Assembly (NCBI RefSeq): GCF_964194025.1 | Contig: NC_134471.1 | Coordinates: 27,900,001 to 27,964,000 of the forward strand | Direction of reading: 5' to 3' | Length of the DNA: 64,000 nucleotides | Source: Convolutriloba macropyga | Lineage: Eukaryota | In this document: in pieces, positions 20,546 to 64,000 of the stretch | Layout: every line of letters starts with the position of its first letter | How positions within the stretch are numbered: position 1 is the stretch's first letter | Notes under the pieces: generated by a model | The model's database searches: none | Seen by the model: the letters and a program-made list of their open reading frames with translations, nothing else | What the model was told of the DNA's origin: nothing | Made by a program: the position numbers and the translations under genes

Positions 20546-20715
20546 TTTATGTGGTGTTTATTTGTTTCAGGTGTACTCTGCTTTTATATCATGTGTGTTT
20601 GTGTGTGTGTTTATTGATATTACTACTAAATATGGTTTTTGAACATGTTGAAGAGTAGTTCTTCGATTGAATGGTGGGAGTGTGATTATGGGGATAGTGG
20701 TTGGGGGGTCTAATT

Positions 20716-24100: not shown

Positions 24101-24236
24101 TGGAATGATCGGGGCATTTTTCACAATTTTATGACTGTTTTTCTGAGTGTTTAAACATGTTGAAGTGTAGTTCTTCGATTGAATGGTGGGTGTGTGATGA
24201 TGGGGATAGTGGTTGGGGGGGGGGGGGGGTCTAATT

Positions 24237-27600: not shown

Positions 27601-28112
27601 TAAAGTAGGTCAATTGGGGTTTTTTGTAGGAGTTATAATTGAATTCGTGCGGATTCGAAAAGTGCCCAAAATCGGGGGCTCCAGCGTCACTCGATTTTTT
27701 AAGTTTTTCAAATCGCTTCAAAATTTGCATGTCGGTTCCTCGGCTTGAAAAATGCTGCAGCGCAAAAGTTTGGAATGATCGGGGCATTTTTCACAATTTC
27801 ATGACTGTTTTTCTGAGGTGAACCTAGGATTTTTGGAAAGGTCAATTTTAGGCTAAGATTTTGGTACTTAGAACGGGTCAAAAGGGGTCAGTTATAGCTG
27901 GAATTGCTTCTACTGGATGAGGGCTGTTCAGGACAGTAGGATAATCCAGGTTCGGACCAGTAGTTCTGGAGATATATCAAAATAACTAGGATTTAAGGTC
28001 GAAATTTTTCGAATTTTGGGCGATTTTTGGGCTTTAGGGCTAAGTTGCTCAGGCTTGTTGGGCTTTTGGGGCAATTAGATGGTACTGCTGGACTGTACTG
28101 GGTCTGTACATG

Positions 28113-28535
28113 CTAATGGATGTAGATGGTTATGGGTAGAGGGTCAAAGACTTGACGTATAAGTTCAAAAATGATGTTAAAATCTAATTTATCATAGCCA
28201 CTGGCGAGTTTTGGAAGACTTAAGTGTGAAATTCCTGCATCTATTACTATTTCTCTTAGTTCATAAAGACTTGCTAATACAGATTCGTATGTGGGTTTGT
28301 GGTAGTATCTGAATTTGGTAACTAATTTGAAGATATAACGCTCAAAATAGGGGTCAAAATATATTAAAACAGCCAATATTCGGTGGGTATCTAAGTCTGA
28401 TTGCACTTGGGGCTGCTGGGTACCAGCTTTTGACTTGTCTGGCTAATGCCTTTGCCATTGCAAGGTCTGCTGATATACAGAGTGCAAAAGAGTGTCGAGA
28501 GTGTAAGATATCTGTTGGTGAACTAAGATAAGTTG
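28113..28535 (-). pseudogene. TARG1/OARD1-like macrodomain, duplicated copy (2-bp deletion near 28370)
   Basis: SFALCISADLAMAKALA...RYIFKLVTK..YHKPTYESV..SL..L.....GISHLSLPKLASGYDKLDF matches the TARG1 pattern HCISED.RMGAGIA / YYLITK / KPTY / LSMPRIGCGLD.L.W. Confidence 0.88.
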
Positions 28536-31075: not shown

Positions 31076-31500
31076 CTAATGGATGTAAATGGTTATGGGT
31101 AGAGGGTCAAAGACTTGTCGTATAAGCTCAAAAATGATGTTAAAATCTAATTTGTCATAGCCACTGGCGAGTTTTGGAAGACTTAAGTGTGAAATTCCTG
31201 CATCTATTACTATTTCTCTCAGTTCATAAAGACTTGCTAATACAGATTCGTTTGTGGGTTTGTGGTAGTATCTGAAATTGGTAACTAAACTGAAGATATA
31301 ACGCTCAAAATAGGGGTCAAAATATATTAAAACTGAGCCAATATTCGGTGGCTATCTAAGTCTGATTGCACTTGGGGCTGCTGGGTACCAGCTTTTGACT
31401 TGTCTGGCTAATCCCTTTGCCATTGCAAAGTCTGCTGATATACAGAGTGCAAAAGAGTGCGGAGAGTGTAAGATATCTGTTGGTGAACTAAGATATGTTG
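31076..31500 (-). pseudogene. TARG1/OARD1-like macrodomain at the Pol C-terminus (premature TAG at 31352)
   Basis: Same motifs as the other copy. It follows integrase and a Pro/Ala/Ser-rich linker, and the frame continues past the TAG as PPNIGSVLIYFD. Confidence 0.88.
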
Positions 31501-34500
31501 CATTGATTTCTTGACTAAAGTGATTTAAGTTTTGGTTTGATGAGCCTGGTGAAGAGTTTTTTGTTTGAGATCTGGTTACTGGTTTGTTTGCTGAACTGCT
31601 GTGCTTTTTCCCTGAATATTTTGCTATACTAGCTCTAACTTGATCTAATTTTGTCTCTCTACTTGGTGTTTTTGACTGTTTTGATGCTTGTGCTGATGCT
31701 TTTATTGCTTCACGTTTTTCTTCTTGCTCCAATCTAGTTCGTGCATTTTTCGGTCTAGGACTGCCTGATCTTCTAACTTGGTTGGTTAGATAAGGGTTTC
31801 TTCTATCTTCTTCTTGCAACATTATTTGTCTATCTAATTTAAATCCGCGTACATTTTTCCGCTGTTGGTAGTCTAGTGGTTTGAATGCACTTTTCTCTGG
31901 TTTTTGTTTAGGATTATAAGGTCGGGCTCTTTTCTTCCTGTCAGTTAATGCAAATTGTTCTTCATGTTATTCTGGAGGCGATTCAATGTCGAATGGTACT
32001 ATTGATGGCTGAGGTTGTTGAGCTGGTAGGAACATTTCAGCATCTGATGAGGATGATACTAGATGAACACGATTTTCTGGTTCTTGCTGTCGAATTTCAT
32101 CAGCAATTAGTGGATCAACCGGTATTCTTGCTAATTGTTAAGCATCTAGGTTCAGGTCAGCTAGATGTTCTTCTGAACTGCTATTCTCATCAAATAAGTT
32201 TGGAATTGCTTCATCTGAGCTTGAAGAATCAAATACTGGAAGATGGACTGGTGCTGTTCGTGGTCTAACTGCTGGTGCTGCTACCCTTGGTGGGGCCAGT
32301 GGTACTGCTGGAGGTGCTGCTGCTGCAGGTCCTGTTGCTTGTCCACCTAGGGGGACGTTTATGGTCACTCTGACTGGGTCTGGTTTCACTTTCTTAGACT
32401 GTTGTAACTCGTTTTCTTGTTCATATATCACATCTGGGATATGTTTATCAAATAGATCAGGTTCCATGTGTTGCCGTCTTGATAGATCAGGTTGAAAATT
32501 TACAGGATTAATTACTTCAAGGCCTTCAGGGGTTTCACTTGGCTTAACTGGTTTCAATCTGATACGGTGAACACATTGTGTGTAATTCGTGTTTACTTTT
32601 CGAATGATGTAATTAGAGTCAGTAAGGACTTTTTCCACTTTATACAGCGGTAGCACTTTCTGAACTTGAGAAGCTATTACTGTTGATTGTTCTAATAGCT
32701 TGGGATTCACAAGTAAACAGAATGATTTCTCCGGAATGGGTTTTGCTGATGCTTTTTGGTCATAATACTTTTCATACACTTCAAGTATGCAGTCGTTAGT
32801 TTTTCTTTGTTTTCTCCGATCTTTTGCATCATGGCATCTTGCAGTTCATTTACAAAATCAGAATTTACTGTTACTGCATTCATTACTTCTCTGGAGAACC
32901 TAATGTCAAGGGATTTTATTGGTTCTCTGCCATGGAATAAAGTTGAAGGGCAACAATTTGTCGCTGAATGATAAGAAGTATTATGAATGAATGTTGCTAA
33001 TGCAACATATTTATGCCAATCTTTCCATTGTTCCTCAGTATTGAGCTTAAATATTCGTTTCAGTGGTCCGTGAGATCGTTCTATTGCTCCAATGGTCTGA
33101 GGGTTCTTTAGTGAGGCATGTTTTAACTTTACTTCTAGTAAACTTGCTCATTCTGACATTAATTCCGAAGTAAAATTTGTTCCTAAGTCACTAAGTATCG
33201 TTTGAGGAATGTAGCTATGTTGAAAGAACACCACTACTAATTCTCGGGCTACTGTGTCAGCATATCCATTTGTTAGTGGGACTGCAAATAGATGCTTTGT
33301 GAAAACATCTATTCGACTCAAAACATACTTAAATTGCGAGGACTTTAGTGGGCCTACTAAGTCAATTTGGAGCATATCTCCTGGATATGATTGTAGTGAA
33401 CTAACTGGTTGCAATTTTGTGTAATGTGGCTTTTCGGAACTCTGTTTAATTGGAGACAAGTCAGGCAGTTTTTAATGAAACTAATGAAGTGTTCAGTGAA
33501 ACCGGGGTAATAGAATCGCTTTCTAAATTCTTGAATTGTTGCTTTTGGGCCTAAATGACATGTTTGTGAATTATGGAGCCTATATATAGTCTCTTTCCAC
33601 AAATGCTTAGGTACACAGAATTGTTTATGAAGTACTTTTCCAGTATCATCATAAAAATTCCGGTATAAGACATTCCCTTCAAGAATTAATCTATTTAAAT
33701 GTTTGTGATACTTTTTTAAGTTGGTTGAAGCATACTTTAAGTCTGGTTGTTGATTGTTTTGTTGAATCCAGCTTATTACTGTACTAATGTCTGCATCCTT
33801 TTGCTGCTCTTCTGCTAAGTTAAGGCTAATTAAGTTGTCTGTAAGGTCTGGGAACTCATCTAATGGGTTTGGGTACTCAGTTGAATTTATTTCTTGCTTT
33901 CTTTTAAGTTTTAATAGACTTTGTATTTCTGTGACTGGTAAATTATTCTGTTTCTTTTTGTAATCGTCATAGACTCCGAGTTTTTTAAGGACGTCAAGTT
34001 CAGCACTATTAATTTCGTCATCGAAATTTTCAATATCAAATAACACATTTAGTTCAATGTCAGGATTCTGGGCTTCTGTGTCTATTTCTATTTCTCTAAC
34101 TGGAATTCTATCTGTTAACTTTAAAGACATTGTCGCTGTTTTATCGTTCTCCATTCTAGAGAGAAAATCTGCTGCGTAGTTAGCGCGTCCAGGAATGTGA
34201 GCAATTACTATGTTAAAGGCAAGTATTCTGTCTAAACAATTCCAAAGAGATGGCGGTATTACTTTTGACTGAAAGAATTGCGTAAGGCTTTTGTTGTCGT
34301 ATAATTACTTGTTTACTTGATCCCCAAATGTAGTGCAAAAAGTAATCCAGTGCATAGTACAAGGCTAGGAACTCTTTGTATTAAATTGAAAACTTTAATT
34401 GCGTTGCATTAAACAAATGCGATCCAAACGATACGGGAGCGTATGTTTTCTTTTCTTTCTTTCCAGTTTCGTTTACATAGTCTTCCACCATTAGTACAAG

Positions 34501-40425: not shown

Positions 40426-41156
40426 CTTGTACTCTAGGAATGCGATTCACCAAAACTTTTCAGGACTCAATTTGATGATGTGAAGGACTGTTCTCAATCT
40501 TAACAGTTTGACCCCATCGATCAACCCACTCTCCCCCCCACCCCCCGCATTACCTAACCCCCTCTGGTCCAGCATTTGCAACCCTACCCCCATCGTTGCC
40601 CCCCACAGACACACACACTCCGGTCACCCCCTAAAGAACCCTGATGAAGAAATATAACCTCCTCACTTCAGGCGAATTGCTCTCTAATGAGGCGGTTATA
40701 TTTCTTTAATTTAATTCAAAGAGATATGGTTAATTTAATTCAAAGAGATATGGTCAACTAAGTGTGTGTCACTCTAATGGAAGGTTATTTACTTGTACTC
40801 TAGGAATGCGATTCACCAAAACTTTTCAGGACTCAATTTGATGATGTGAAGGACTGTTCTCAATCTTAACAGTTTGACCCCATCGATCAACCCACTCTCC
40901 CCCCCACCCCCCGCATTACCTAACCCCCTCTGGTCCAGCATTTGCAACCCTACCCCCATCGTTGCCCCCCACAGACACACACACTCCGGTCACCCCCTAA
41001 AGAACCCTGATGAAGAAATATAACCTCCTCACTTCAGGCGAATTGCTCTCTAATGAGGCGGTTATATTTCTTTAATTTAATTCAAAGAGATATGGTTAAT
41101 TTAATTCAAAGAGATATGGTCAACTAAGTGTGTGTCACTCTAATGGAAGGTTATTT
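40426..41156. repeat. 366-bp tandem duplication with a nested ~24-bp repeat
   Basis: CTTGTACTCTAGGAATGCG at 40426 and 40792; the copies appear identical. Confidence 0.92.
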
Positions 41157-45888: not shown

Positions 45889-47422
45889 GTAGGAATCGAC
45901 TTAAAAGCTGCATTTTAGATTGATCTCACAATTATCAACTTCGCAAGTATCTGATATCAGATTGATGGAAGGTTGTAAATTAATGATCATAATCGACCAT
46001 TGATATTATAATCAGTACAGTTGGAATTACTCTCGCTACCTTCTCGGAAAAATCATCTGATGTGTTTCTCCTTTTCTAGATCCAAAATTTTTTTCCACCG
46101 TTGATTTAGGCCCATACAATAACACAAAGTTTTGAGCTCGCGTCTCATTGGGTGAGACATCAGGCTAGATATAACGCAGCTGGCTGCATCGTTCTGTTAT
46201 CAGCCAGAATGGTGATTCGTTTGAGGGTATAACGAACTGTCTGAAAATCACCCAAACGACTCGAAGTTCAAAGAATACTGTTTTTACTTTACTTCGTCCT
46301 CAGCAGGTGTCAATCAAAACCACATTTCGAATTTGCGCTGCATCTTGGTTATAAGGGAGAAGTGATGGTAACATCGAATTCTGCTGGCTGACCCGAATTC
46401 CATTTAAGTGAGAATGTCGTCCAGTCTGGATTTGTTGTCGGGTAGTAAACTCTACTGCTCAAAGATGGGTGACTAAAGGGCGCTCGAGCAAGATGACTTA
46501 ACTCTGTCTCTTATACTATCACGACAAGCGATCATAGCACGCCGGCCATGGCATGAGATGGCTTGACCGCCCATTTCATCTTGATTCCCAGATTTACAAA
46601 ATAGACATTATTTTCTCGTAAACCTTGACTCTCAGTATATATTTAAGAGCAGCACGGAATTCATTCGCCGATAATTGTAGCCCGCAGTTTCAATGGAGGC
46701 TGAGGATATCGTGCCACCTGATTGTGGTAAAGAAAGATTTAGCAAACGGGCTTTTACTCTAGTGGAAGTGTGTTTGCCTAACGAGTTAAATAAAAATTTT
46801 TCTTGTGAGAGAAATGCGTTGTCGCAATTTCCTGATTCTTCAATTGTCTCAGCAAATGAGATGCCAGTTGGATTAAGGCCTTCTAGTGTTTCTACCAGAA
46901 ATATTGGAAAACAGAACCAGCGAATGCGTCATGATCAGATGATGTTCTTATTCCAACAACAGTTTTGTTAAATTGGAGGGAATGAAGTCCCATGAAGTTT
47001 CTGATATTGGAACACAAAATGCCTTCAAGGTAGATTATAGCTAGAAAGAGAGTCAGATCATAGCAGGCTTTTTTCTGAGGACTTTGAAGGAACATCGCAT
47101 CGCAAGAAGTAGAATACTTTAAGGGCACCAAGGCAATACTCAGAATACCAGGAGCACGCTAAGGAAAGGCTAATTTTTCGGGGATTTCCCCTACGTTTTT
47201 TGCGCGTTCAGCAAACAAGAAAAATTATCAGATATTTTAAAGCTCGTAAAGCAATTTCTAAGCTGTTCTGAATTTTTTTACTGCTGTAACTATCAATATT
47301 GTTCATGCTTTCGATTAACCATAGCTTAGCTTATTTTTATCCCTCTTGATTTCTAACAGCAGTTTGCTGCTGATTTTTGATTTTTCAACGATTTGGATTT
47401 TATAAGCTTAATAATGCCGTCA

Positions 47423-48000
47423 TCAAGATCTCGCGTCGTCGTTCGTCTCCGAATAGTATATCTTGTACATGTTGCCCGTCTCTCGATCAGGTCCACTGCC
47501 ACTCCTGATGTCTTCAAACGTATTTATGAACTGGCAAATGGCTGTATGGTCTTCCCGTCCGATTCCGTTGAAATCATCAATGGGCCATAAAAAGCACCGC
47601 TCCTCCTGATAGTTTTGTTGAGCCAAGTATGCTCGAAGCACCTGTGTAAGCAATCTTGAGCCTGTTCATGCTCATATCCTTTGAGTTAGTGTGCACGCTG
47701 TAAGAAAAGGTTTGTTCGACTGAATGTTTTTCTTCGTCTCCCGTTGCATACATGAGCTTTTCGTCCCCGTCATAAATGCTCTCATACATCGAAGTCTCAG
47801 GAAATGGCTCCAGAGAATGTCAATTTCCATGTATTTGATAAACATCCAGAACTCCTCAGAGAACCAATTGGTTGTTCATAAAACACTCCGGCCTCACGTT
47901 TGTTGAGCACGAAAAGAACAGGTAATTTGTTATGTATGCTATATATGGCGTCAGTTAATGAGGGTAAATTCTGTGATATACTGTGTGCTCTCCATCTCAA
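47423..48000 (-). pseudogene. PHM-like (copper type II monooxygenase) pseudogene copy
   Basis: KLMYAT, TFSYSVHTN and PIDD...AICQF...GSGPDRETGNMYKIYYSE; frameshifted and internally deleted. Confidence 0.75.
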
Positions 48001-49330
48001 AACAATTTTAAAAGTAGTTGTCCTCGCAGCATTGGGCTTTTGGACGCAACCAAATTATGATTCTCTCAGTCGCAGCAAGAGTTGTCAAACAATTAATCGT
48101 CCATGAGCTACTGATATTCATGTTCATTACCGTAAGCGGTAGGCTTCACTGATTCCTTAAATCTGTTGTTTTTGGATTGTTGGTGGGGATCAGATATGAT
48201 ATACTGCATTCCCTCTGTCTTAAACGCTTTACAAAAAATTTGTCCTCGCATCTTTAGACTGCACGACACAACGAGATCTTTGACTTGGTGTTATTTACTT
48301 TAGAATCAACATCAGCCTTTTTTATATCCCCTTGTTTATAAATAGCTCAGCAAGCAACATTTTTCATAGCTACGAAGACGTAAGCTGATTACTATATGGC
48401 GGTGTTGGTGGTTTTTCACAAATCAAAGAATTTGAATTGTATGGGGGGCGCTGCCTTTTTTAGATATCTTCACTCTTTGATGTCAATGAAAAATCAATGG
48501 TGATTCAAGTCAGAAGGATTAATGGAGTAAGCAACAAAGCGAGTAGGTTTCGAACTGTGTTTTTAAAACTAACATTTGAGTGAAGTGAGAAATTGATGTT
48601 TGATCAAGTTTTTGATTTTGAGAAAGATTTCTTAATCGTTATACAATTTGATTTGTTGTAACTGGTTTCTCTCTTCAGTTATAATTAAAATGATAGCATG
48701 GATTTATGTGTTTGTTTTTACTTTAATGCGACTAATCTACATGAAGTTTGATTTTATCAATTTTTCATATGACGCGCTTTTCCTTTGTATTACATTGATT
48801 TGCGCACAATTTCGTTGGTTTCCGCACGGTTTTTGCATCTCAGTGCTTGTTATGCCGTTCATACGTTGATGCAATTTTCCGGACTGGCCCTGATATTTTT
48901 GTTAATATTTTTGTTAAGATTGGTTTAGACCTTTTCTGTCATTTTGTTTTCTGTGAGAAGTCTGTGAGTTAGTGGTAGTAAAGGTAGCTAGAAGCGAGTA
49001 GTTTAAGTGCGTGAGCTCTCATCGAGCTGTTTTCCAATATCGAGTTAGAATACAATTTTTTTAGATTTTTTTACGTGCCACCATTTAACCTTTCGTTTTT
49101 CTGTTTTCATCTCAGTTTTTGAAAGATTGATTATAATTTCCGGGGAGCTTGACCGAGAAGCCCGCATGCTGTCTTCATCTCCCGTCGCCTAAAGGAGCGT
49201 TTGCTCCACGTCGTAAATGCGCCCGCTTATTTCATCTAAGTTTCCCAGCGTTTCTCCGGAGGCTGCCGATTATCTTGTTCATCCACAGAGCACCAATAAG
49301 TAGGTGAGAAAACACTTGCTTGCTCGCTGG

Positions 49331-49336
<6 letters not shown>

Positions 49337-49373
<37 letters not shown>
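49337..49373. repeat. (CT)n microsatellite
   Basis: About 18 CT units. Confidence 0.95.
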
Positions 49374-49376
<3 letters not shown>

Positions 49377-49715
49377 CCCTCTGGTTTTCGAAGTTTTCAA
49401 AAAACATGACCGGGCTCGGGCTCGAACTTGACGTGAACTACATATACAACCAACATAGAGGCTCCATCATAAAAGTCTCACCCTGGGTCAAACATATAGG
49501 ACGTATTTTTCTATACCTCTCCTCGTTGTTCGTCTCCGAATATCAAATGTTGCATATCTCCTGATCTTGACCGTTGACAACCCTGCTGATATCCTCATTC
49601 GTAGTGCAGAACTGGCAAATGTGTGTAAGCTGGTCTTCTCATTCTGAGCCAGTTTTCCAACTGGAATCTGGAAACAAGATGTCTGTTGAAATTTTAAGTT
49701 CAATCATTTGCTGTC

Positions 49716-50600
49716 TTATGGGACGCTCCAGCTGATAGACGCTGAGACAGTTGGGCCTGGTCGACAGGACGCTCCTGTCCTGTCCCACATAGCAGCTCCA
49801 CGATAATGTCTCCCTGGGTCAAACATACAGGAAGTATGTTTCTTTAGCGAGGAATTGCTGTTGGGATCATTCCTCTCCGAATAGTACATCACGTACATGT
49901 TGCACATCTCTTGATCTGGCCTTATACCAATCCTGATACCCCAGTTGCATTGCTAAGCTATATATTGGTTGTAATTTGGTCATCTGGTTCGAATTTGATT
50001 GGATCATTAATGGGGGTTGAAGCACCGCTCCTGAGGGCTCCTCCAGTCAATTATTCTGAAAGCATTATCTTTGTAAGCATTTTTGAGCCTGCTCACCCTC
50101 ATCTTGAGTGAGTTTGTACCCTATATGCAAAGGCGGTTATAGTTTTGTTTCTAAGGCAGATCAATGGATGACAGTTATTGAAAAGTAAGAGTGTCTGCAG
50201 GTGCCGCATTGGTATTTTCTTGATGCCCCTGCCATCCAATACATACAGGACTTCGCTGAAGTACGCCTGCAACTCCAAATATCCATACTTGATGCCATTT
50301 TCCACCTCAATTGAGACATCCGGAGGGGGGGGGGGCTTAAACGATGAGAAGCATCGCTGTCTTCATCTGGCGTCGCATACATGAGAGTTCGGTCCCCATC
50401 GTAAATGCGCTCGCATAATTTGAATTTCTGAAATTGGCTTTCGAGGTTGTCGATTTCCATGTATTTGACATTCATATGCACAGAGCACTAATTGCTAGAT
50501 CATAAAACTATCTCTCTCTCTCTGTGAGTGTGTGTGTGTCCCAGCGTATGTTTATCAGGCAAACAACAACTTGATATGTATACCGCCTTTGAACACGGGG
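49716..50600 (-). pseudogene. Best-preserved PHM-like pseudogene copy
   Basis: TLMYAT, PPDVSIEVENGIKYGYLELQAYF, ITAFAYRVQTH and EMCNMYVMYYSE...TSC align in order with PHM ILYAW, LPKGVGFRVG...YFVLQVHY, VFAYRVHTH and DEMCNLYIMYYME. A further C-terminal fragment lies at ~49470-49650. Confidence 0.82.
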
Positions 50601-50631
50601 GCAACTTCTTTGACATACTGTGTTCTTTTTC

Positions 50632-50723
50632 TTACAGGTGTGATATCATTTACTTGCGTATCGACATGAGCCAGTTTTACAGGAGTGATGTCATTTACTT
50701 GCGTATCGACATGAGCCAGTTTT
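50632..50723. repeat. 45-bp tandem duplication
   Basis: ACAGG.GTGAT.TCATTTACTTGCGTATCGACATGAGCCAGTTTT occurs twice. Confidence 0.85.
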
Positions 50724-50799
50724 AACTAATTACTAGCTTAATAAAAGCGAAATTAACAATAGGCTTATCATTATCTTCTGAGTGCTACAGCTCAAATAC

Positions 50800-53700
50800 A
50801 AAATTATGATTCTCTTAGTCGGAGCAAGAGTTGTCTAACAATTAACCTTACATGAGCTGATGATTTTCATGTTAATTGCTGTGAGCAGTAAGCTTCAATA
50901 ATTGCTTGTAAATCTGGTATTTGGATTGTTGGGGTGCCTAGTGTTTGAGCGTGAATCAACTTGTGTATTAAAGAAGATAAAGGCTTTGGTGTAGTTTTCG
51001 CTATTGACAAAAATTGAGTGAATTTCAAATATGCCCAAACTGATCTAGAGCAGACTCATTTATCGTAGTTGGAAACCCATTTTATGTCTGATACTTTGGA
51101 TGTGTCTGAATTCCGCTCCAAGATTGAGACTTTTTATAGATTCTTTATTATCGAGAAAAGTAGCGAATGGTCGTTAGCTGGTCATCTGGTTCGATTCGAT
51201 CATCAATCGGGGTAGAAGCACCGCTCCTGCTGAACCCCAAGCCAATATGCTCAAAGCTTTATTTTTGTAAGCAATCATGAGACTTAACCCTCGAACCATT
51301 TACTTTGATTGTGTGCCATGTATGCAAAAGATGTTAGCATCTTGCTGCTAGACCAGAATAAAAATTGAGATTATTGTCAAGGGTAAGAGCTTTATTAGGT
51401 GCGGATTGAGATTGTCTTCCCTTTACCATTAAAAGAACCACCCCGGCAATGTATTTATTATTTCAGAGTGCCTTACGTTGGAGTTTCTAGGCTGGTCAGC
51501 GATGAAACTTTGATCATTCGAGACGCACAAGGAATGGCTGAAGTATACCTGCAACTGTAATTGTCCATATTTTGTGCCACTTTCCATCCCCTTTTACATA
51601 TTCGGCGGAGCTTGACGAGGAGACCGCACCGCCGTCTTCGTCCGCCGTCGCACACAACCATTTGGCCTCCGTTATGAATGCACTCGTATAGTTCATCTGA
51701 GTTCCGGGAACTGGCCTCCGATATTGTTGATTTCCCATGTATTTGACATTTATCAACAACTCCATAGAACACCAACTTATTGTCCGTAAAACACACTGTC
51801 TCCACGTTTGTTGAGCTCGAAAAGACTATCAGCTTGATTTGTATGCTATAGATGCCGTCAGTTAACGAGAGGGGAAATTCTGTGACATACCATATGCGTT
51901 CTATCTCACCACTTTACAAATGTAATCGTCCTGGCATCATTGGGCTTTTGGACGCAACCCAATTTCGATTCTCTTAGTCACAGCAAGAGTTGTCTAACAA
52001 TTATTCGTCCATGAGCTTCTGATATTCAGGTCCATTACTGTAAGCGGTAAGCTTCACTGATTCCCTAAATCTGGTATTTTTGGATTGTTATTGGGGCCTA
52101 GTGTTTCAGAGTGAACCAACTTATCCATCAAACAGATAAAGAATTTGTTATATGTTTCGCTATTGACAAAAGTTGAGTGAATTGCAAATATGCACGAATT
52201 GATCTAGAGAGGACTCATTCATCGTAGTTGGAAACCCGTTTTGTGTATCTCATTTTGGATTTGACTGAATCGCGCTCCAAGATTGAGACTTTATAAAGAT
52301 TTGTTATCGGATTAAGTGAAGGTTTTTTTTCAACTGGAGTCTGGAAACTAGATCTGTCTTTTGTAATTTTTATTTCACTGATCTGTGTTGAACCAGTTGA
52401 GAGACACTGAGGCCGTTGGACAGGACGCTACTTACAATGTTTTAAAAAACATGGCGTGACCTTGACCTGAATTTCATTTACAACCCCCATAATAGTTCCA
52501 CCATAATGTCTCTGGGTTGAACATTAAGGAAGTATGTTTTTATAGCTCGGATTTGCTCCGGAGTGATCTCTGGGATCTCTCCTCGCCGTTCCTCTCCGAA
52601 TAGTACTTTAGGTGCATGTTTCACACCTCTTGGTCCGCCTTAGCCAAGCTCGCATTGCCAAACTGGCAATGGTAGGTTGGGCATCTGTTTCGATTTCGAT
52701 TGGATCTTGGATGGGGGTAGAAGCACAGCTCCTGTAATCTCAAGCCTATATGCTCAAAGCATTATCTTTGAAAGCAATGTTGAGCCTGCTCATCCTCAAA
52801 ACATGTACCATGTGTGTTCCATTTATGCAAAGGCTGTTGGGATCTAGCTGCTGGACCAGAAAAAAATGGGGGTTATTCTAAAGGATAAGAGATTTAGTAG
52901 GTGCTGCTTTGAGATAGTCTTTCTTTTACCATTAAAAGAACCACCCCGGCAATGTGTTTTGTATATTCCGGCTGCCTTGAGTAGGAATTTTCAGGCTGGT
53001 GAGCGATGAGGCTTTAATCATTCGAGACGTACAAGGAACGGCTGAATTACGCCTGCAACTCTAAGTGTACATACGTTGTGCCATTTTCCACCCCAACTTG
53101 CACATCCTGTGGAGCTTGAACGAGGAGACCGCAGCGCCGTCTTCATCCGCCTTCGCATACAAGCATTTGGTCTCCGTTATGAATGCGCTGGTATAATTCA
53201 TATAAATTTCAGGAAGTGGCTCCCGAGGTTGTCGACTCCCCATGTATTTGACATTCATCAACAATTTCACAGAGCACCAACTGCTTGTTCATAAAACACA
53301 CTCTCTCTCCCCACTTTTGTTGAGCACTAAGAGAACACAAACTTTAAGCGGAAAGCTTCGCTGATTCCTTAAATCTGGTATTTTTGGATTATTGGTGGGG
53401 CCTAGTGTTTCAGAGTGAACCAACTTTTCCATCAAACAGATAAAGATTTTGCTATATGTTTCGCTATTGACAAAAGTTGAGTGAATTGCAAATATGCACG
53501 AATTGCTCTAGAGTGGACTCATTCATCGTAGTTGGAAACCCATTTTATGTATCTCATTTTGGATTTCACTGAATCGCGCTCCAAGATTGAGACTTTATAA
53601 AGCTTTGTTATCGGATTAAGTAAAGGTTTTTTTTTTTCAACTGGAGTATGGAAGCTAGATCTATCTTTTGTAATTTTAAGTTCATTGATATTATTTGAAC

Positions 53701-56400
53701 CAGTTGAGGGACACGGAGCCAGTTGGACAAGACGCTCCTTACATTGTTTTAAAAAACATGGCGTGACCTTGACCTGAAATTCATTTACAACCCCCATAAT
53801 AGTTCCATCATAATGTCTCTGGGTTGAACATATAGGAAGTTTGTTTTTATAGCTCGGATTTGATCCGGAGTGATCTCTGGGTTCTCTCCTCGCCGTTCCT
53901 CTCCGAATAGTACTTTAGGTGCACTTTTCACACCTCTTGGTTCGCCTTAGCCAAGCTCGCATTGCCAAACTGGCAATGGTTGTAGGCTGGGCATCTGTTT
54001 CGATTTCGATTGGATCTTCGATTGGGGTAGAAGCACAGCTCCTGTAACCTCAAGCCTATATGCTCAAAGCATTATCTTTGAAAGCAATCTTGAGCCTGCT
54101 CATCCTCAAACCATGTACCCTATGTTTTCCATGTATGCAAAGGCTGTTGGGATCTAGAGGCTTTAATCATTCGAGACGTACAAGGAACGGCTGAATTACG
54201 CCTGCAACTCAAGTGTCCATACGTTGTGCCATTTTCCACCCCAACCTGCACATCCTGTGGAGCTTGAACGAGGAGATCACATCGCCGTCTTCATCCGCCT
54301 TCGCATACAAGCATTTGGTCTCCGTTATGAATGCGCTTTTATAATTCATATAAATCTCAGGAAGTGGCTCCCGAGGTTGTCGACTCCCCATGTATTTGAC
54401 ATTCATCAACAATTTCACAGAGCACCAACTGCTTGTTCATAAAACACTCTCTGTCCCCACGTTTGTTGAGCACTAAGAGAACACAAACTTTAAGTGGAAA
54501 GCTTCGCTGATTCCTTAAATCTGGTATTTTTGGATTGTTGGTGGGGCATATTGTTTCAGAGTGAACCAACTTATCCATCAAACAGATAAAGATTTTGCTA
54601 TATGTTTCGCTATTGACAAAAGTTGAGTGAATTGCAAATATGCACGAATTGCTCTAGAGTGGACTAATTCATCGTAGTTTGAAACCCATTTTGTGCATCT
54701 CATTTTTGATTTGACTGAATCGCGCACCAAGATTGAGACTTTATAAAGATTTGTTATCGGATTAAGTTAAGGTTTTTTTTCAACTGGAGTCTGGAAACTA
54801 GATCTGTCTTTTGTAATTTTTATTTCACTGATCTTTTTTGAACCAGTTGAGGGACACGGAGCCAGTTGGACAGGATGCTCCTTACATTGTTTTAGAAAAA
54901 CATGGCGTGACCTTGACCTGAATTTCATTTACAACCCCCATAATAGTTCCACCATAATGTCTCTGGGTTGAACATATAGGAAGTATGTTTTTATAGCTCG
55001 GATTTGCTCCGGATTGATCTCTGTGATCTCTCCTCGCCTTTTCTCTCCGTATAGTACTTTAGGTGCATGTTTCACATCTCCTGGTCCGCTTTAGCCAAGC
55101 TCGCATTGCCAAACTGGCAATGGTTGTAGGCTGGGCATCTGTTTCGATTTCGATTGGATCTTCGATGGGGTTAGAAGCACAGCTCCTGTAATCTCAAGCC
55201 AATATGCTCAAAGCATTATCTTTGAAAGCAATCTTGAGCCTGCTCATGCTCAAACCATGTACCATGTGTGTTCCATTTATGCAAAGGCTGTTGGGATCAT
55301 CTAGCTGCTGGACCAGAAAAAAAATGGAGGTTATTCTAAAGGATAAGAGATTTAGTAGGTGCTGCTTTGAGATATTCTTTCTTTTACCATTAAAAGAACC
55401 ACCCCGGCAATGTGTTTTGTATATTCCGGCTGCCTTGAGTAGGAATTTTCAGGCCGGTGAGCGATGAGGCTTTAATCTTTCGAGACGTACATGGAACGGC
55501 TGAGTTACGCCTTCAACTCTTAAGTTTCCATACGTTGTCATTTTCCACCCCAACTTACACATCCTGTGGAGCTTGAACGAGGAGACCGCATCGCCGTCTT
55601 CATCTGCCGTCGCATACAAGCATTTGGTCTCCGTTATGAATGCGCTCGTATAAATCATATAAATTTCAGGAAGTGGCCCCCGAGGTTGTCGACTCCCCAT
55701 GTATTTGACATTCATCAACAATTTCACAGAGCACCAACTGCTTGTTCATAAAACACACTCTCTGTCCCCACGTTTGTTGAGCACTAAGAGAACACAAAAT
55801 TGTTATGTATGCCGTCATTGAACGAGAGGGGAATTCTTTGATGTACCATGTGCTCTCTATCTCAACCACTTTACAAATGTGATCTTCCGGGCACCATTAG
55901 TTTTTTTGGACGCATCCATATTATGACTCTTAGTCGCAGCAACAGTTGTCTGACAATTAAGCTTCCCTGAGTTGCTAATATTCATGTTTATTACTGTAAG
56001 CAGTAAGCTTCACTGATTCCCTATAAATCTGTGTTTTTAGATTGTTTGGCCTAGTGTTTTTGAGTGAACAAACTTATCTATTCAAGCAGATAAAGGTTTT
56101 GTTATGTTTCGCTATTTACAAAAATACAGTGAATTGCAAATATATCCAAATTGATCTAGATCAGACTCCTTCATCGTAGTTGGAAAACCTGCTTATGTAT
56201 CTCACTTTGGATTTGACTGAATTGCGCACCAAGATTGAGACTTTTTTAAGATTTATCGGAATAAGTAATTGTTTCCAACTGGAATCTGGAAACAAGATCT
56301 GTCTTTTGAAAAATTTTCAGTTCACTGATTTGCTGTGTTGATCCAGCTGAGGGACGCTCCGGCTGATGGGCGCTGAGCCTGTTGGACAGGACGCTCATAG
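50800..56400 (-). repeat. Tandem array of ~1.15-1.5-kb units, each a PHM-like pseudogene plus spacer
   Basis: Marker GACTCATTCATCGTAGTTGG at about 51050, 52210, 53515, 54660 and 56165. Most units keep an AFAY-type segment and the LELQAY segment, with stops and frameshifts. Confidence 0.88.
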
Positions 56401-59400
56401 CAATAAGTTTTCAGAAAACATTTCATGACCTTAACCTGTATTTGTTTCTATAGCACTGATGTGCTGCTGGGATCTCTCCTCGTCGTTCCTCTCCGAATGG
56501 CGCATTAGGTACCTGTTGCACATCTCTTGATCTGGCCCTTTAACCAATCCTGATATAATCAGTTGCATCGCCAGACTAGCGAATGGCCGTAAGTTGGTCA
56601 TCTGGTTCGATTTTGATTGTATCATCAACCAGGTTAGAAGCTTCAGGCTGGTAAGCGATGTGAATTTAATCATTCGAGACGTACAAGGAATGGCTGAAGT
56701 ACGCCTGCATCTCTGTGTTCATACTTTGCGGCACTTTCCACCCGAATTTACATATACGGCAGAGCTTCAACGAGGAGGCCGCATAGCCGTCCTCATCCGC
56801 CGTTGCATACAATCAATTGGTCTCCGTTATGAATTCGCTCGTATAATTCATCTATGTTTCGAAGTGGCTCCCGAGGTTTTCGATTTGCATGTATTTGACA
56901 TTCATCATCAAAGCCAGTGCACCAATTGCTTATTCGTAAAACACACTCTCTGCGCCACGTTTGTTAAGCACGAAAAGAACACCAACTTGTTATGTATGCC
57001 GTCAACCAGATCTTCAACAAGCTATTATTTACTTCGATATCAATAACTACTGTGGTGCTCACTTGATATCAACATCAGTCGTTTTTGAGAACCCCTGGTT
57101 TATGAATAGCACAGTTAACCACAGGGTAATCTTTATTTTCTGAGGGAATACAGCTATGAAATACCAACTTATGATTCTTGATCGCAGCAAGAGTTGATGG
57201 TACAACACACATAGCACCTCCACAATAATGTCTCTCAGGATCACACATAAAGGAAGTCTGTTTCTATAGCGTGGACGTGCTGCTGGGATCTCTCATCGTC
57301 TTCCTCTCCGAATGTTACATTAGCTACATGTTGCAATTCTCTTGATCTGGCCCCTTACCAATCCTGATATCCTCAGTCGCATTGCCAAACTGGCGAATGG
57401 TCGTAAGCTGGTCATTTGGTTCAATTTTGATTGGATCATCAATCGTGTTAGAAGCTCCAGGCTGGTCAGCGATATGAATTTGATCATCGGAGACGTACAA
57501 GGCATGGTTGAAGTACGCCTGCAATTCTTTGTCTATACTTTGCGCCACTTTCCACCCCAGTTTACTTATATGGCGGAGCTTCAACAAGGAAACCGCATCG
57601 CCGTCTTCATCCGCCGTCGCATACAATCATTTGGTCTCCGTTATGAATTTGATCATTCGAGGCGTACAAGGAATGAATTTGATCATTCGAGACGTACAAG
57701 GAATGGCTGAAGTACGCCTGCATCTCTGTGTCCATACTTTGCGGCACTTTCCACCCCATTTTACATATACGGCCGAGCTTCAACGAGGAGACCGCACAGC
57801 CGTCCTCATCCGCCGTCGCATACAATCATTTGATCTCCGTTATGAATTCGCTCGTATAATTCATCTAAGTTTCGAGAATTGGCTTCCGAGGTTGTCGATT
57901 TCCATGTATTTGACATTCATCAATAAATCCACAGTGCACCAATTGCTTGTTCGTAAAACACACTCTCTGCGCCACGTTTGTTCAGCACGAAAAGAACACC
58001 AACTTGTTATGTATGCCGTCAACCAGATCTTCAACGAGCTATTGTTTACTTTGATATCAACAACTACTGGTACTCACGTGGTATCAACATCAGTCGTTTT
58101 TGTCAACCCCTGTTTTAATGAATAGCACAGTTAACCACAGGGTAATCATTATTTTTTGAGGGAATACAGCTATGAAATACCAAATTATGATTCCTGATCC
58201 CAGCAAGAGTGGCTGGTACAACACACCTAGCACCTCCACAATAATGTCTCTCAGTGTCACACATAGGGCAAGTATGTTTCTATAGCGCGGACATGCTGCT
58301 GGGATCTCTCCTCGTCTTCCTCTCCGAATGGTACATTAGCTATATGTTGCACATCTCTTGATCTGGCCCCTTACCGATCCTGATATCCTCAGTCGCATTG
58401 CCAAACTGGCGAATAGTTGTAAGCTGGTCATCTGGTTTGGTTTTGATTGGATCATCAACCGGGTTAGAAGCTGCAGGCTGGTCAGCGATATGAATTTGAT
58501 CATTTGAGACGTACAAGGCATGGCTGAAGTACGCCTGCAACTCTTTGTCCCTACTTTGCACCACTTTCCATCCCAATTTACGTATACGGCGGAGCTTCTA
58601 CGAGGAAGCCGCATCGACGTCTTCATCCGCCGTCGCATACAATCATTTGGTCTCCGTTATGAATTCGCTCGTATAATTCATCTAAGTTTCGAGAATTGGC
58701 TCCCGAGGTTGTCGATTTCCATGTATTTGACATTCATCAATAAATCCACAGTGCACCAATTGCTTGTTCATAAAACACACTATCTGCGCCACGTTTGTTA
58801 AGCACGAAAAAAACACCAACTTGTTATGTATGCCGTCAACCAGATCTTCAACGTGCTATTATTTTGATATCAACATCTACTTCGGTACTCACGTGGTATC
58901 AACATCAGTCGTTTTTGACAAACCGTGGTTTTTGAATAGCACAGTTAAGCACAGGGTAATCATTATCTTCTGAGTGAATACAGCTAGGAATACACCAAAA
59001 TATGATTCTCCTGGTCGCAGCAATAGTTGCTGGTACAACACACATAGCAACTCCACAATAATGTCTCTCCGTGTCACACATAAAGGAAGTATATGTTTCT
59101 ATAGCGTGGACGTGCTGCTGGGATCTCTCCTCGTCTTCCTCTCCGAATGGTACATTAGGTACATGTTGCACATCTCTTTATCTGGCCCCTAACCAATCCT
59201 GATATCCTCAGTCGCATTGCCAAACTGGCGAATGGTCGTAAGCTGGTCATCTGGTTCGATTTTGATTGGATCATCAACGGGGTTAGCAGCTCCAGGCTGG
59301 TCAGCGATATGAATTTGATCATTTGAGACGTACAAGGCACGGCTGAAGTACGCCCGCAACTCTTTGTCCAAATTTTGCGCCACTTTCCACCCCAATTTAC

Positions 59401-62400
59401 ATATACGGCGGAGCTTCAACGATGAGACCGCATTGCTGTCTTCACAGCCGTCGCATACAATCATTTGGTCTCCGTTATGAATTCGCTCGTATAATTCATC
59501 TAAGTTTCGAAGTGGCTCCCGAGGTTGTCATTTTCCATGTATTTGACATTCATCAATAAATCCACAGTGCACCAATTGCTTGTTCGTATAACAAACTTTC
59601 TGCGCCACGTTTGTTAGGCACGAAAAGAACACCAACTTGTTATGTATGCCGTCAACCAGGTCTTCAACGTGCTATTGTTTACTTTGATATCAACATCTAC
59701 TTGGTATCAACAGCAGTCGTTTTTGGCAACCCCTGATTTATGAATAGCACAGTTAACCACAGGGTAATCTTTATCTTCTGAGTGAATACAGCTATGAAAT
59801 ACCACATTATGATTCTCCTGGTCGCAGCAGGAGTTGCAGGTACAACACATAGCACCTCCAAAATAATGTCTCTCTGTGTCACACATAAAGGAAGTGTATG
59901 TTTCTAAAGCGCGGACGTGCTGCTGCGATCTCTCCTCGTCTTCCTCTCTGAATGGTACATTAGGTATATGTTGCACATCTCTTTATCTGGCCCCTAACCA
60001 ATCTTGATATCCTCAGTCGCATTGCCAAACTCGCGAGTGTTCGTAAGCTTTTCATCTGGTTCGATTTTTATTGGATCATCAACAGGGTTAGAAGCTCCAG
60101 GCTGGTCAGCGATATAAATTTGATCATTCGAGACGTACAAGGCATGGCTGAAATACGCCTGCAACTCTTTGTCCATATTTTGCGCCTGTTTCGACCCCAA
60201 TTTACATATACGGCGGAGCTTCAACGAGGAGACCGCATCGCCGTCTTCATCCGCTGTCGCATACAATCATTTGGTCCCCCTTATGAATTCGCTCGTATAA
60301 CTCGTCTAAAATTCGCGAAGTGGCTCCCGAGATTGTCGATTTCCATGTATTTGACATTCATCAATAAATCCACGGTTCACCAATTGCTTGTTCGTAAAAC
60401 ACACTCTCTGCGCCACGTTTGTTAAGCACAAAAAGAACACTAACTTGTTATGTATGTCGTCAGCCAGATCTGCAACGTGCTATTATTTTGATATCAACAT
60501 CTACTTTGGTACTCACGTGGTGTCAACATCAGCCGTTTTTGACAACCCCTGGTTTATGAATAGCACAGTTAACCACAGGGTAATATTTACCTTCTGAGTG
60601 AATACAGCTAGGAATACACCAAATTATGATTCTCCTGGTCGCAGCAAGAGTTGCTGGTACAACACACATAGCACCTCCCCAATAATGTCTCTCTGTGTCA
60701 CACATAAAGGAAGTATATGTTTCTATAGCGCGGACGTGCTGCTGCAATCTCTCCTCGTCTTCCTCTCCGAATGGTACATTAGGTATATGTTGCACATCTC
60801 TTTATCTGGCCCCTAACCAATCTTGATATCCTCAGTCGCATTGCCAAACTCGCGAGTGGTCGTAAGCTTTTCATCTGGTTCGATTTTTATTGGATCATCA
60901 ACAGGGTTAGAAGCTCCAGGCTGGTCAGCGATATAAATTTGATCATTCGAGACGTACAAGGCATAGCTGAAATACGCCTGCAACTCTTTGTCCATATTTT
61001 GCGCCTGTTTCGACCCCAATTTACATATACGGCGGAGCTTCAACGAGGAGACCGCATCGCCGTCTTCATCCGCCGTCGCATACAATCATTTGGTCCCCGT
61101 TATGAATTCGCTCGTATAACTCGTCTAAAATTCGCGAAGTGGCTCCCGAGATTGTCGATTTCCATGTATTTGACATTCATCAATAAATCCACGGTTCACC
61201 AATTGCTTGTTCGTAAAACACACTCTCTGCGCCACGTTTGTTAAGCACAAAAAGAACACTAACTTGTTATGTATGTCGTCAGCCAGATCTGCAACGTGCT
61301 ATTATTTTGATATCAACATCTACTTTGGTACTCACGTGGTGTCAACATCAGCCGTTTTTGACAACCCCTGGTTTATGAATAGCACAGTTAACCACAGGGT
61401 AATATTTATCTTCTGAGTGAATACAGCTAGGAATACACCAAATTATGATTCTCCTGGTCGCAGCAAGAGTTGCTGGTACAACACATAGCACCTCCACAAT
61501 AATGTCTCTCTGTGTCACACATAAAGGAAGTATATGTTTCTATAGCGCGGACGTGCTGCTGCGATCTCTCCTCGTCTTCCTCTCCGAATGGTACATTAGG
61601 TACATGTTGCACATCTCTTGATCTGGCCCCTTACCAATCCTGATATCCTCGGTCGCATTGCCAAACTGGCGAATGGTTGTAAGCTGGTCATCTGGTTCGA
61701 TTTTGATTGGATCATCAACCGGGTTACAAGCTCCAGGCAGGTCAGCGATATGAATTTGTTCATTCGAGACATACAAGGCATGGCTGAAGTACGCTAGCAT
61801 CTCTGTGTCCATACTTTGCGGCACTTTCCACCCCAATTTACATTCACGGCGGAGCTTTAACGAGGAGACCGCATCGCCGTCTTCATCGGCCGTCGCATAA
61901 AATCATTTGGTCTCCGTTATGAATTCGCTCGTATAATTCATCTAAGTTTCGAGAATTGGCTCCAGAGATTGTCGATTTCCATGTATTTGACATTCATCAA
62001 TAAATCCACAGTGCACCAATTGCTTGTTCGCAAAGCACACTCTCTGCGCCACGTTTTTAAGCGTGAAAAGAACTCCGACTTGTTATGTATGCTGTCAACC
62101 AGATCTTCAACGTGCTATTATTTACTTTGATATCAACATCTAATTTGGTACTCACGTGGTGTCAACATCATTCGTTTTTGACAACCCCTGTTTTATGAAA
62201 AGCACAGTTAACCACAGGGCAATCATTATCTTCTGAGTGAATACAGCTTTGAAATACCAAATTATGATTTTCCTGGTCGCAGCAAGAAATGCTGGTACAA
62301 CACACATAGCACCTCCCCAATAATGTCTCTCTGTGTCACACATAAAGGAAGTATATGTTTCTATAGCGCGGACGTGCTGCTGCAATCTCTCCTCGTCTTC

Positions 62401-64000
62401 CTCTCCGAATGGTACATTAGGTACATGTTGCACATCTCTTGATCTGGCCCCTTACCAATCTTGATATCCTCGGTCGCATTGCCAAACTGGCGAATGGTTG
62501 TAAGCTGGTCATCTGGTTCGATTTTGATTGGATCATCAACCGGGTTACAAGCTCCAGGCGGGTCAGCGATATGAATTTGTTCATTCGAGACATACAAGGC
62601 ATGGCTGAAGTACGCCAGCATCTCTGTGTCCATACTTTGCGGCACTTTCCACCACAATTTACATTCACGGCGGAGCTTTAACGAGGAGACAGCATCGCCG
62701 TCTTCATCGGCCGTCGCAGAAAATCATTTGGTCTCCGTTATGAATTCGCTCGTATAATTCATCTAAGTTTCGAGAATTGGCTCCAGAGATTGTCGATTTC
62801 CATGTATTTGACATTCATCAATAAATCCACAGTGCACCATTGCCTGTTCGCAAAGCACACTCTCTGCGCCACGTTTTTAAGCATGAAAAGAACACCGACT
62901 TGTTATGTATGCTGTCAACCAGATCTTCAACGTGCTATTATTTACTTTGATATCAACATCTAATTTGGTACTCACGTGGTGTCAACATCATTCGTTTTTG
63001 ACAACCCTGTTTTATGAAAAGCACAGTTAACCACAGGGTAATCATTATCTTCTGAGTGAATACAGCTTTGAAATACCAAATTATGATTTTCCTCTTCGCA
63101 GCAAGAAATGCTGGTACAACACACATAGCAGGTCTACAATAATGTCTCTCTGGGTCACACATAAAGAATGTTTCTATAGCGCGGACATGCTGCTGGGATC
63201 TCTCCTCGTCTTCCTCTCCGAATGGTACATTAGGTACATGTTGCACATCTATTGATCTGGCCCCCTACCAATCTTGATATCCTCAGTCGCATTGCCAAAC
63301 TGGTTAATGGTCGTAAGCTGGTCATCTGGTTCGATTTTGATTGGATCATCAACCGGGTTAGAAGCTCCAGGCTGGTCAGCTATATGAGTTTGATCATTGG
63401 AGACGTACAAGGCACGGCTGAAGTACGCCTGCAACCCTTTGTCCTTCCTTTGCGCAACTTTCCACCCCAATTTACATATACGTCGGGGCTTCAACGAGGA
63501 GACCGCATCGCCGTCTTCATCCGCCGTCGCATACAATCATTTGGTCTCCGTTATGATGTCGCTCGTATAATTCATCTAAGTTTCGAGAATTGGCTCCCGA
63601 GGTTGTCGATTTCCATGTATTTGACATTCATCAATAAATCTACAGTGCACCAATTGCTTGTTCGTAAAACACACTCTCTGCGCCACGTTTGTTAAGCACA
63701 AAAAGAACACCAACTTGTTATGTATATCGTCAGCGAGATCTGCAACGTGCTATTATTTTGATATCAACATCTACTTTGGTAGTCACGTGGTGTCAACATC
63801 AGTCGTTTTTGACGACCCCTGGTTTATGAATAGCGCAGTTAACCACAGGGTAATATTTATCTTCTGAGTGAATACAGCTAGGAATACACCAAATTATGAT
63901 TCTCCTGGTCGCAGCAAGAGTTCCTGGTACAACACATAGCACCTCCACAATAATGTCTCTCTGTGTCACACATAAAGGAAGTATATGTTTCTATAGCGCG
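56400..64000 (-). repeat. ~819-bp satellite (9+ copies, continuing past the window end) derived from PHM-like coding sequence
   Basis: Marker (G/A)ATCTCTCCTCGTC at 56471, 57287, 58303, 59122, 59927, 60746, 61563, 62384 and 63197. Units encode variants of ELQAYF...DDPIKIEPDDQLTTIRQFGNATEDIRIGKGPDQEMCNMYLMY. Confidence 0.95.

What the first reader, a model, noticed from the sequence alone, without database searches (positions are those of the whole stretch)
47400..64000. Birth of a satellite from a protein-coding gene, preserved as a spatial gradient
Seen left to right: dispersed, diverged gene-like copies (47.4-51.9 kb), then 1.15-1.5-kb tandem units (to 56.4 kb), then homogeneous ~819-bp units. 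The short unit arose by a ~260-bp deletion that removed the AFAY-x-x-H segment (joining ...IADQP to GASNPVDD...) and by loss of the spacer. Relative to the 47.7- and 50.4-kb copies, a 2-nt-shorter segment before TATGCG is shared from ~51.66 kb onward. Inference: pseudogenisation came before amplification, so successive stages of gene-to-satellite conversion sit side by side. Satellites usually derive from TEs or non-coding DNA.
Basis: partly seen in the sequence, partly recalled or inferred. Interest (0 to 1): 0.75.

Follow-up and report, generated by a model that had tools for sequence, protein, structure and literature searches.

The report
Tandem array of dead enzyme-gene copies
A copper-enzyme gene without introns died, and its broken copies were then multiplied side by side into a 20-kb block of 24 shortened repeats; this is a tidy example of a known kind of gene-derived repeat, not a genome-scale satellite.

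Summary
The minus strand of window 47.4-64 kb carries decayed copies of a PHM/DBH-like copper monooxygenase gene. The period is about 2.7 kb, then 1.15-1.5 kb, then about 819 bp.

All short units share one identical deletion junction. The deletion is 267 bp (89 codons, in frame) and removes the AFAY..H copper site. The short units also lack a roughly 0.36-kb spacer related to a LINE. A 2-nt frameshift is shared from 51.67 kb onward, so the gene broke before the long and short units amplified.

Three things change the reading.
- The array is small and unique. It stops 12 kb beyond the window: 24 units, 19.6 kb, one locus.
- It is not a one-way gradient. Old long-type copies also lie to its right, and they group with the 50-kb copy. 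Units at both edges are the most diverged. The core holds a 3-unit, 2,455-bp higher-order repeat whose two copies differ at 3 bases. This is the usual signature of unequal crossing-over.
- The units are not homogeneous; mean pairwise divergence is about 10%.

I found no sign of purifying selection on either strand. Expression could not be tested.

Verdict: a real array of pseudogene copies, resembling a macrosatellite. It is a new member of a known kind, of moderate interest.

The parts
47423..47924 (-). Oldest, leftmost pseudogene copy (D47). It keeps an FSYSVHT version of the copper-site motif and the C-terminal ..NMYKIYYSE end. It has its own separate internal deletion.
49517..49639 (-). 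Stray partial duplicate of the C-terminal end of the gene.
49784..50833 (-). Pseudogene copy D50. It gives colinear matches to PHM-like paralogues from P.DVS..YGYLELQAYF through AFAYRVQTH to EMCNMYVMYYSE, and carries several stops and frameshifts.
50879..51148 (.). Spacer related to a LINE, partial copy.
51190..51832 (-). Pseudogene copy D51, with its tail missing. It is the first copy to carry the shared 2-nt frameshift (at 51670) and is the nearest relative of the short units in the tree.
52037..53340 (-). Long unit 1 (1304 bp): about 0.44 kb of spacer containing a LINE-related piece, plus a pseudogene with a stop codon inside the AFA. motif.
53341..54486 (-). Long unit 2 (1146 bp). It has its own 160-bp internal deletion.
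54487..55992 (-). Long unit 3 (1506 bp). It still keeps the roughly 195-bp stretch that encodes the start of the N-terminal domain.
55993..56442 (.). Spacer copy abutting the first short unit. A matching spacer copy follows the last short unit at C4:27976182-27976535.
56443..64000 (-). Short-unit array. Nine and a bit of its 24 units lie in the window; it continues to C4:27976006. Each unit is the pseudogene minus 267 bp and minus the spacer.
57474..57848 (.). 199-bp internal duplication that makes the second short unit 1016 bp long.

Best explanation
This is a local tandem array of pseudogene copies, shaped by repeated unequal crossing-over and internal deletions.

The starting gene was an intronless PHM/DBH-like copper monooxygenase. 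It was already atypical at its first copper site. It was duplicated in tandem together with a neighbouring piece related to a LINE, in units of roughly 1.5-2.7 kb.

The copies decayed. One lineage acquired a 2-nt frameshift. From that lineage two sub-variants were re-amplified on the spot:
- a long form of three units (1.15-1.5 kb);
- a short form, born once, by a 267-bp in-frame deletion that removed the second copper site and by loss of the roughly 0.36-kb spacer.

The short form expanded to 24 units. It still turns over in its centre by multi-unit duplications (a 3-unit higher-order repeat), while its edge units drift apart.

Shown: the anatomy, the single origin of the short form, the shared frameshift, neutral evolution, and both ends of the array. 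Inferred: unequal crossing-over as the mechanism, and the order of the events.
For: Gene origin: Cu2_monoox_C at E 4.5e-7 for one unit ORF. At least ten units score over the Pfam cut-off in the genome-wide scan. There are colinear matches to three intronless paralogues, covering the N-domain start, P.DVS..LQAYF, AFAYRV.TH and EMCNMY.

Single origin of the short form: the same junction occurs in all 24 units, and the short units form one clade with 100/99 support.

Breakage before amplification: a 2-nt deletion is shared by D51, the 3 long units and all 25 short-unit copies of this segment (24 units plus the internal duplicate). It breaks the ..GD..LMYAT frame that is continuous in D47 and D50 and that matches the paralogue stretch CGDNTKETLLY.

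Neutrality: diversity shows no period of three. pN/pS is 0.70 in the gene frame against 0.82 and 1.05 in the two control frames, and 13 of 19 units carry stops. The antisense ORF gives pN/pS 1.10. Unit lengths are not multiples of 3.

Unequal crossing-over signature: edge units are 12-14% diverged on average against 8-10% in the core. Two 2,455-bp three-unit blocks differ at 3 bases. Divergence is lowest at a lag of 3 units. Mantel r 0.45, p 1e-4.

The array is bounded and unique.

The spacer is about 70% identical to an internal part of a 3.8-kb retroelement family that carries a reverse transcriptase.

Short contigs from other samples of the same organism cover the array at several times the flank depth.
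Against: No RNA data could be laid, so a transcribed role (long or small RNA) is not excluded.

The direction of some indels is uncertain. The 86-bp difference between D50/R77/R79 and the other copies fits paralogue spacing better as a deletion in the former group, but that rests on length and weak motif similarity only.

The first 100 or so residues of the gene are recognisable only weakly (E 0.001-1 in a small local database).

The tree was rooted on the longest branch (D47).

The copy number comes from one assembly. Depth in contigs is only a rough check.
Confidence: 0.8

Rival explanations
1. One reading: a one-directional spatial series that records successive stages of a gene turning into a true satellite, with age falling from left to right.
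For: On the left side the period shrinks in steps, and similarity to the short unit rises from about 71-75% to 83% and then 87% or more. The strict ladder tree is not rejected (AU p 0.09).
Against: Old long-type copies lie on the right flank too and group with the 50-kb copy. The youngest units are in the middle and both edges are the most diverged. The best tree puts the 51.5-kb copy, not the adjacent long units, next to the short units. The array is 19.6 kb at one locus.
Confidence: 0.1
2. The array is functional: either units or parts of them are exons of an expressed repetitive protein, or the locus is kept as a source of non-coding or small RNA.
For: ORFs of 90-205 aa recur on both strands. 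The 267-bp deletion keeps the reading frame.
Against: Stops and frameshifts occur in most units. There is no codon periodicity. pN/pS is about 0.7-1.1, no different from control frames. The plus-strand ORF is the antisense shadow of the old coding frame. No RNA run was available, so an RNA role remains untested, not disproved.
Confidence: 0.06
3. The array is cargo of a mobile element, or was amplified by one. Giant transposons that carry their own satellites exist in this genome.
For: Earlier notes describe giant CACTA-type elements with internal satellites in this genome. The long units contain a piece related to a retroelement.
Against: Unit DNA and unit protein match nothing outside this locus. 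The retroelement piece is an old internal fragment at about 70% identity, without the element's 3' end. No transposase or terminal repeats were looked for beyond this.
Confidence: 0.02
4. Assembly artefact: the array, or its higher-order block, was created or collapsed by the assembler.
For: Two 2,455-bp blocks are nearly identical.
Against: The two blocks differ at 3 positions, and a third block is 1-7% diverged. Contigs from other samples of the same organism cover the units and their variants.
Confidence: 0.02

Closest known systems
Gene-bearing macrosatellites (RS447/USP17, TAF11-like, D4Z4/DUX4, CT47; review PMC5687341)
   Same: Head-to-tail arrays of tens of units at a single locus, each unit built around an ORF. 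The TAF11-like unit also carries transposon fragments.
   Different: Here every copy is dead and evolves neutrally. The unit shrank to 0.82 kb, below the 1.4-6.1 kb of the listed human examples. Copy-number polymorphism and chromatin state are unknown.
Classical satellite DNA with higher-order repeats
   Same: Tandem non-coding units, a 3-unit higher-order repeat, a younger centre and diverged edges.
   Different: Only 24 units (19.6 kb) at one locus. Units differ by about 10%. There is no evidence of heterochromatic or centromeric location. The review PMC5615363 names rDNA spacers and TEs as seeds of satellites, not protein genes.
PHM/DBH copper type II ascorbate-dependent monooxygenases (Pfam PF01082 + PF03712)
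   Same: C-terminal domain match. The H.H copper motif and the EMC methionine ligand are present in the older copies. The order of the whole catalytic core is preserved.
   Different: No intact ORF anywhere. The N-domain HH motif reads HN and QIHY reads QAYF in all copies examined. Identity to the intronless paralogues in the same genome is only 35-40%.

Membership tests
Copper type II monooxygenase (PHM/DBH-like), as the gene of origin | Match to the C-terminal domain profile PF03712 above the curated cut-off | tested here: met
   29.9 bits against a cut-off of 23 for one unit ORF. At least ten array units score over the cut-off in the genome scan.
Copper type II monooxygenase (PHM/DBH-like), as the gene of origin | Second copper site: H.H motif (AFA..H.H) and the methionine in ..EMC.. 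| tested here: met
   AFAYRVQTH, AFAYRVHAH and FANRVHAH in the D50, R77 and R79 copies. EMCNMY is present in most copies. The H.H part is deleted in all short units.
Copper type II monooxygenase (PHM/DBH-like), as the gene of origin | First copper site: HH motif and the histidine of ..QIHY.. | tested here: not met
   The aligned positions read IHN.. and LQAYF in the copies where they can be aligned. The alignments are weak.
Copper type II monooxygenase (PHM/DBH-like), as the gene of origin | Match to the N-terminal domain profile PF01082 | tested here: not met
   No hit at this locus in the genome scan or for the unit ORF. There is only weak colinear similarity to paralogues.
Copper type II monooxygenase (PHM/DBH-like), as the gene of origin | Intact open reading frame | tested here: not met
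   Every copy has stops or frameshifts.
Satellite DNA | Head-to-tail tandem units with no coding constraint | tested here: met
Satellite DNA | Long arrays or high copy number in the genome | tested here: not met
   24 units, 19.6 kb, one locus. Contig depth in other samples is roughly ten times that of the flank, not hundreds of times (a rough figure).
Satellite DNA | Homogenisation of units or higher-order repeats | tested here: inconclusive
   A 3-unit higher-order repeat and some unit pairs at 0-3% divergence, but mean divergence is about 10%.
Satellite DNA | Heterochromatic or centromeric chromatin | not testable with these tools
   No chromatin data are available.
Gene-bearing macrosatellite | Tens of kb-scale units at one locus, built around a gene | tested here: met
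   24 + 3 units at one locus, each being nearly the whole catalytic core of the gene. The 0.82-kb unit is at the small end of the range.
Gene-bearing macrosatellite | Copy number varies between individuals | not tested
   Only short contigs of other samples were available.

The most novel reading that the evidence does not exclude
The locus is a true proto-satellite caught early. It is a protein-gene-derived repeat that has already shed coding ballast in discrete steps (spacer, 89 codons) and has begun to form higher-order repeats. The intermediates are still in place, so it would be a natural model for how unit length and homogeneity evolve at the birth of a satellite.
Probability: 0.2. Interest if true: 0.5.

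Novelty: new member of a known kind. Interest (0 to 1): 0.33.

Why it matters
The locus keeps the ancestral long unit, two derived unit types, the exact deletion junction and a young higher-order block side by side in 33 kb. That makes the stepwise reshaping of a tandem repeat unusually easy to read.

It shows that a dead protein gene can seed such an array. It does not show a new kind of element, nor a satellite of genomic weight.

It also warns annotators that recurring 90-200-aa ORFs on both strands of such arrays are relics of the old gene, not genes.

Tried and rejected
- Tandem Repeats Finder missed the array because its longest period is 500.
- Rfam and tRNA scans of 47-64 kb found nothing, so the spacer is not a recognisable tRNA-derived SINE.
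- I first read ECQIHGN as the QIHY copper motif, and the 86-bp difference as an insertion shared by the long and short units. Colinear alignment to paralogues showed that LELQAYF is the QIHY equivalent. Paralogue spacing (68-72 residues between that motif and AFAF) fits the form containing the 86 bp, so the 86-bp change is more likely a deletion in D50/R77/R79.
- I considered that the stretch after ..YHSE is the next copy's N-domain. Its first part instead fits the C-terminal tail (C.P.E.H..W), and the N-domain start follows about 25 codons later.
- The search for a close intact parent in the genome found none. All hits lie in this locus, and the paralogues are only 35-40% identical.
- No RNA runs were found, and the four runs laid are contigs only, so expression, strand and ends could not be read.

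Full report
WHAT IS THERE

The window is G000:C4:27900001-27964000 of a 1.18-Gb animal genome. From window 56443 onward, direct-repeat analysis and BLAST with one unit show head-to-tail units. Their spacings are 814, 1016, 819, 805, 819, 817, 821 and 813 bp. Between 51.5 and 56.4 kb the spacings are 1146-1505 bp. Weaker matches lie at 47.7, 49.5-50.8 and 51.2-51.8 kb. Tandem Repeats Finder missed the array only because its longest period is 500.

I fetched the DNA beyond the window. The short array ends at C4:27976006, giving 24 units and 19.6 kb. It is followed by a spacer copy and two more diverged long-type copies at C4:27976.2-27979.4 kb, here called R77 and R79. Neither unit DNA nor a unit ORF matches anything else in the genome.

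THE GENE OF ORIGIN

One unit ORF on the minus strand hits Pfam Cu2_monoox_C at E 4.5e-7. At least ten array units pass the curated cut-off in a genome-wide scan.

The genome has intronless PHM-like paralogues on C1 and C5, with ORFs of 397-484 aa. They are only 35-40% identical to the array copies. In a local search, however, they give colinear matches along the older copies:
- the start of the N-domain (..D..C..YY.T.F.., then IHN where the family has HH);
- P.DVS..G.KYGYLELQAYF, which is the QIHY strand;
- AFAYRV.TH, the H.H copper site;
- ..PI.I.PDD..;
- G..EMCNMY.MYY.

So a unit is nearly the whole catalytic core. It is followed by the C-terminal tail and, about 25 codons later, by the next copy. 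This agrees with an earlier first-reader note (s1-232285) that the parent was intronless with an altered first copper site. The N-terminal evidence is weak. Every copy has stops and frameshifts.

UNIT TYPES

The fullest long unit (54487-55992, 1506 bp) has three parts:
- about 0.44 kb of spacer;
- the pseudogene;
- a roughly 195-bp stretch holding the start of the N-domain.

The core of the spacer (about 335 bp) is roughly 70% identical to an internal part of a 3.8-kb dispersed retroelement family. That family has a reverse-transcriptase domain and the usual 5' truncations. The spacer is also present at the D50/D51 junction and in R77 and R79, so it belonged to the old duplicated unit.

Two of the three long units have lost the N-domain stretch, and one of these also has its own 160-bp deletion.

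The short unit differs from the long unit in two ways:
- it lacks long-unit positions 689-955 (267 bp, 89 codons, in frame), which removes the H.H site and joins ..IADQP to GASNPVDD..;
- it lacks about 0.36 kb of spacer.

The deletion junction is the same 20-mer, with at most 2 mismatches, in all 24 units. The deletion therefore arose once.

ORDER OF EVENTS

A maximum-likelihood tree was built on the roughly 350 bp shared by all copies. It gives:
- the short units as one clade (100/99);
- the 51.5-kb copy as their sister (96/89);
- then the three long units (100/99);
- D50 grouping with R77 and R79 (99/97).

D47 is on a long branch and was used as the root. A tree that forces long and short units together, which is the strict spatial ladder, is 3.8 log-likelihood units worse. 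It is not rejected (AU p 0.09).

The 2-nt shorter segment before TGTATGCG is present in D51, all 3 long units and all 25 short-unit copies of that segment. It is absent from D47 and D50. It interrupts the ..GD..LMYAT.DE.. frame, which is continuous in D47 and D50 and corresponds to the paralogue stretch CGDNTKETLLY. It is therefore a derived frameshift, older than both amplifications.

The consensus of the short units also carries two stops upstream in that frame.

Whether the gene was already dead at the very first duplications cannot be told.

NO SELECTION

- Across the short units, nucleotide diversity (mean 0.10) shows no three-base periodicity. The lowest p among 9 windows is 0.05.
- In the 107-codon PHM-like frame, pN/pS is 0.70. 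The two control frames of the same DNA give 1.05 and 0.82. Of 19 non-redundant units, 13 have at least one stop and several have frameshifts.
- The recurring plus-strand ORFs (100-205 aa) give pN/pS 1.10 and also carry stops. They are the antisense shadow of the old coding frame.
- Unit lengths are not multiples of three.

ARRAY DYNAMICS

- Pairwise divergence among short units ranges from 0 to 16%.
- Units 11-13 and 14-16 form two 2,455-bp blocks that differ at 3 bases. A third block (units 17-19) is 1-7% diverged from them.
- Divergence is lowest at a lag of 3 units.
- Mean divergence to all other units is 12-14% for unit 1 and units 21-24, against 8-10% in the core.
- Divergence correlates with distance along the array (Mantel r 0.45, p 1e-4; core units only r 0.24, p 0.006).

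Young multi-unit duplications in the middle with drifting edges on both sides is the pattern expected from unequal crossing-over. That is established knowledge of tandem arrays and is my inference for this locus. The right-hand side was outside the window.

INDEPENDENT DATA

Four runs of the same coded organism hold part of the array's words. When two of these and two runs with smaller shares were laid, the short contigs of X1 and X2 cover the flank at depth about 25-55. They cover the array at summed depths mostly of 100-900, with many unit variants.

This supports a real multi-copy array of the order of ten or more copies. The tool warns that this depth is not a copy number. No RNA run was listed, so expression is untested.

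COMPARISON AND VERDICT

Tandem arrays built around protein genes are known. RS447 carries USP17 (4.7 kb, 20-103 copies). The TAF11-like array has a 3.4-kb unit, 10-98 copies, and transposon fragments inside the unit. D4Z4 carries DUX4, and CT47 is another case (PMC5687341). A satellite review names rDNA spacers and TEs as seeds of satellites (PMC5615363), so a protein-gene seed is the less usual case, but it is not new.

This locus differs in that all copies are dead and the unit has been cut down stepwise to 0.82 kb. It fails the size and copy-number criterion of a satellite.

I rate it as a real, well-preserved, pseudogene-derived array that resembles a macrosatellite. It is a new member of a known kind.

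Earlier notes of giant transposons carrying satellites in this genome prompted a check for mobile-element cargo. The units occur at one locus only, which argues against that.

LIMITS

- Rooting and the direction of some indels are uncertain.
- The N-terminal anatomy rests on weak matches.
- Copy number comes from one assembly.

Noticed in passing
L059:2055-5885 (G000:C16:22999314-23003144) and 40 or more other loci: A young, abundant 3.8-kb retroelement family, with copies 89-95% alike. One end is fixed and the other is variably truncated. It has an RVT_1 domain, while its other ORFs have no Pfam match. The array's spacer resembles an internal part of it at about 70% identity.
   Followed up: partly
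G000:C7:14455196-15135023: A cluster of at least five partial Cu2_monoox_C matches within 700 kb, one of them with a stop. This may be another tandemly duplicated or decaying group of PHM-like genes.
   Followed up: no
G000:C1:75644446-75645306, C1:29978636-29979508, C5:54298104-54299024: Three apparently intact PHM-like genes with both domains in a single open frame (ORFs of 397-484 aa). The family is intronless in this animal.
   Followed up: partly
window 48361-48474: A short interspersed repeat of about 110 bp, with dozens of copies genome-wide at about 80-85% identity. It is inserted in the 5' flank of the leftmost copy. That flank (48.2-48.75 kb) is otherwise homologous to the flank of the rightmost copy at C4:27979623-27980042.
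   Followed up: partly
window 40426-41156: A perfect two-copy tandem duplication of a 366-bp unit (100% match).
   Followed up: no
window 18000-33000: Strong positive GC skew (0.2-0.3) over about 14 kb. This coincides with earlier notes of a provirus-like element with a Pol macrodomain.
   Followed up: no
window 55785-55916, 58026-58176, 59573-59716: A run labelled as a different organism (organism B) holds a few 151-base contigs identical to the locus, at depth 2-3. This may reflect a relative, a hybrid or a mislabelled sample.
   Followed up: no
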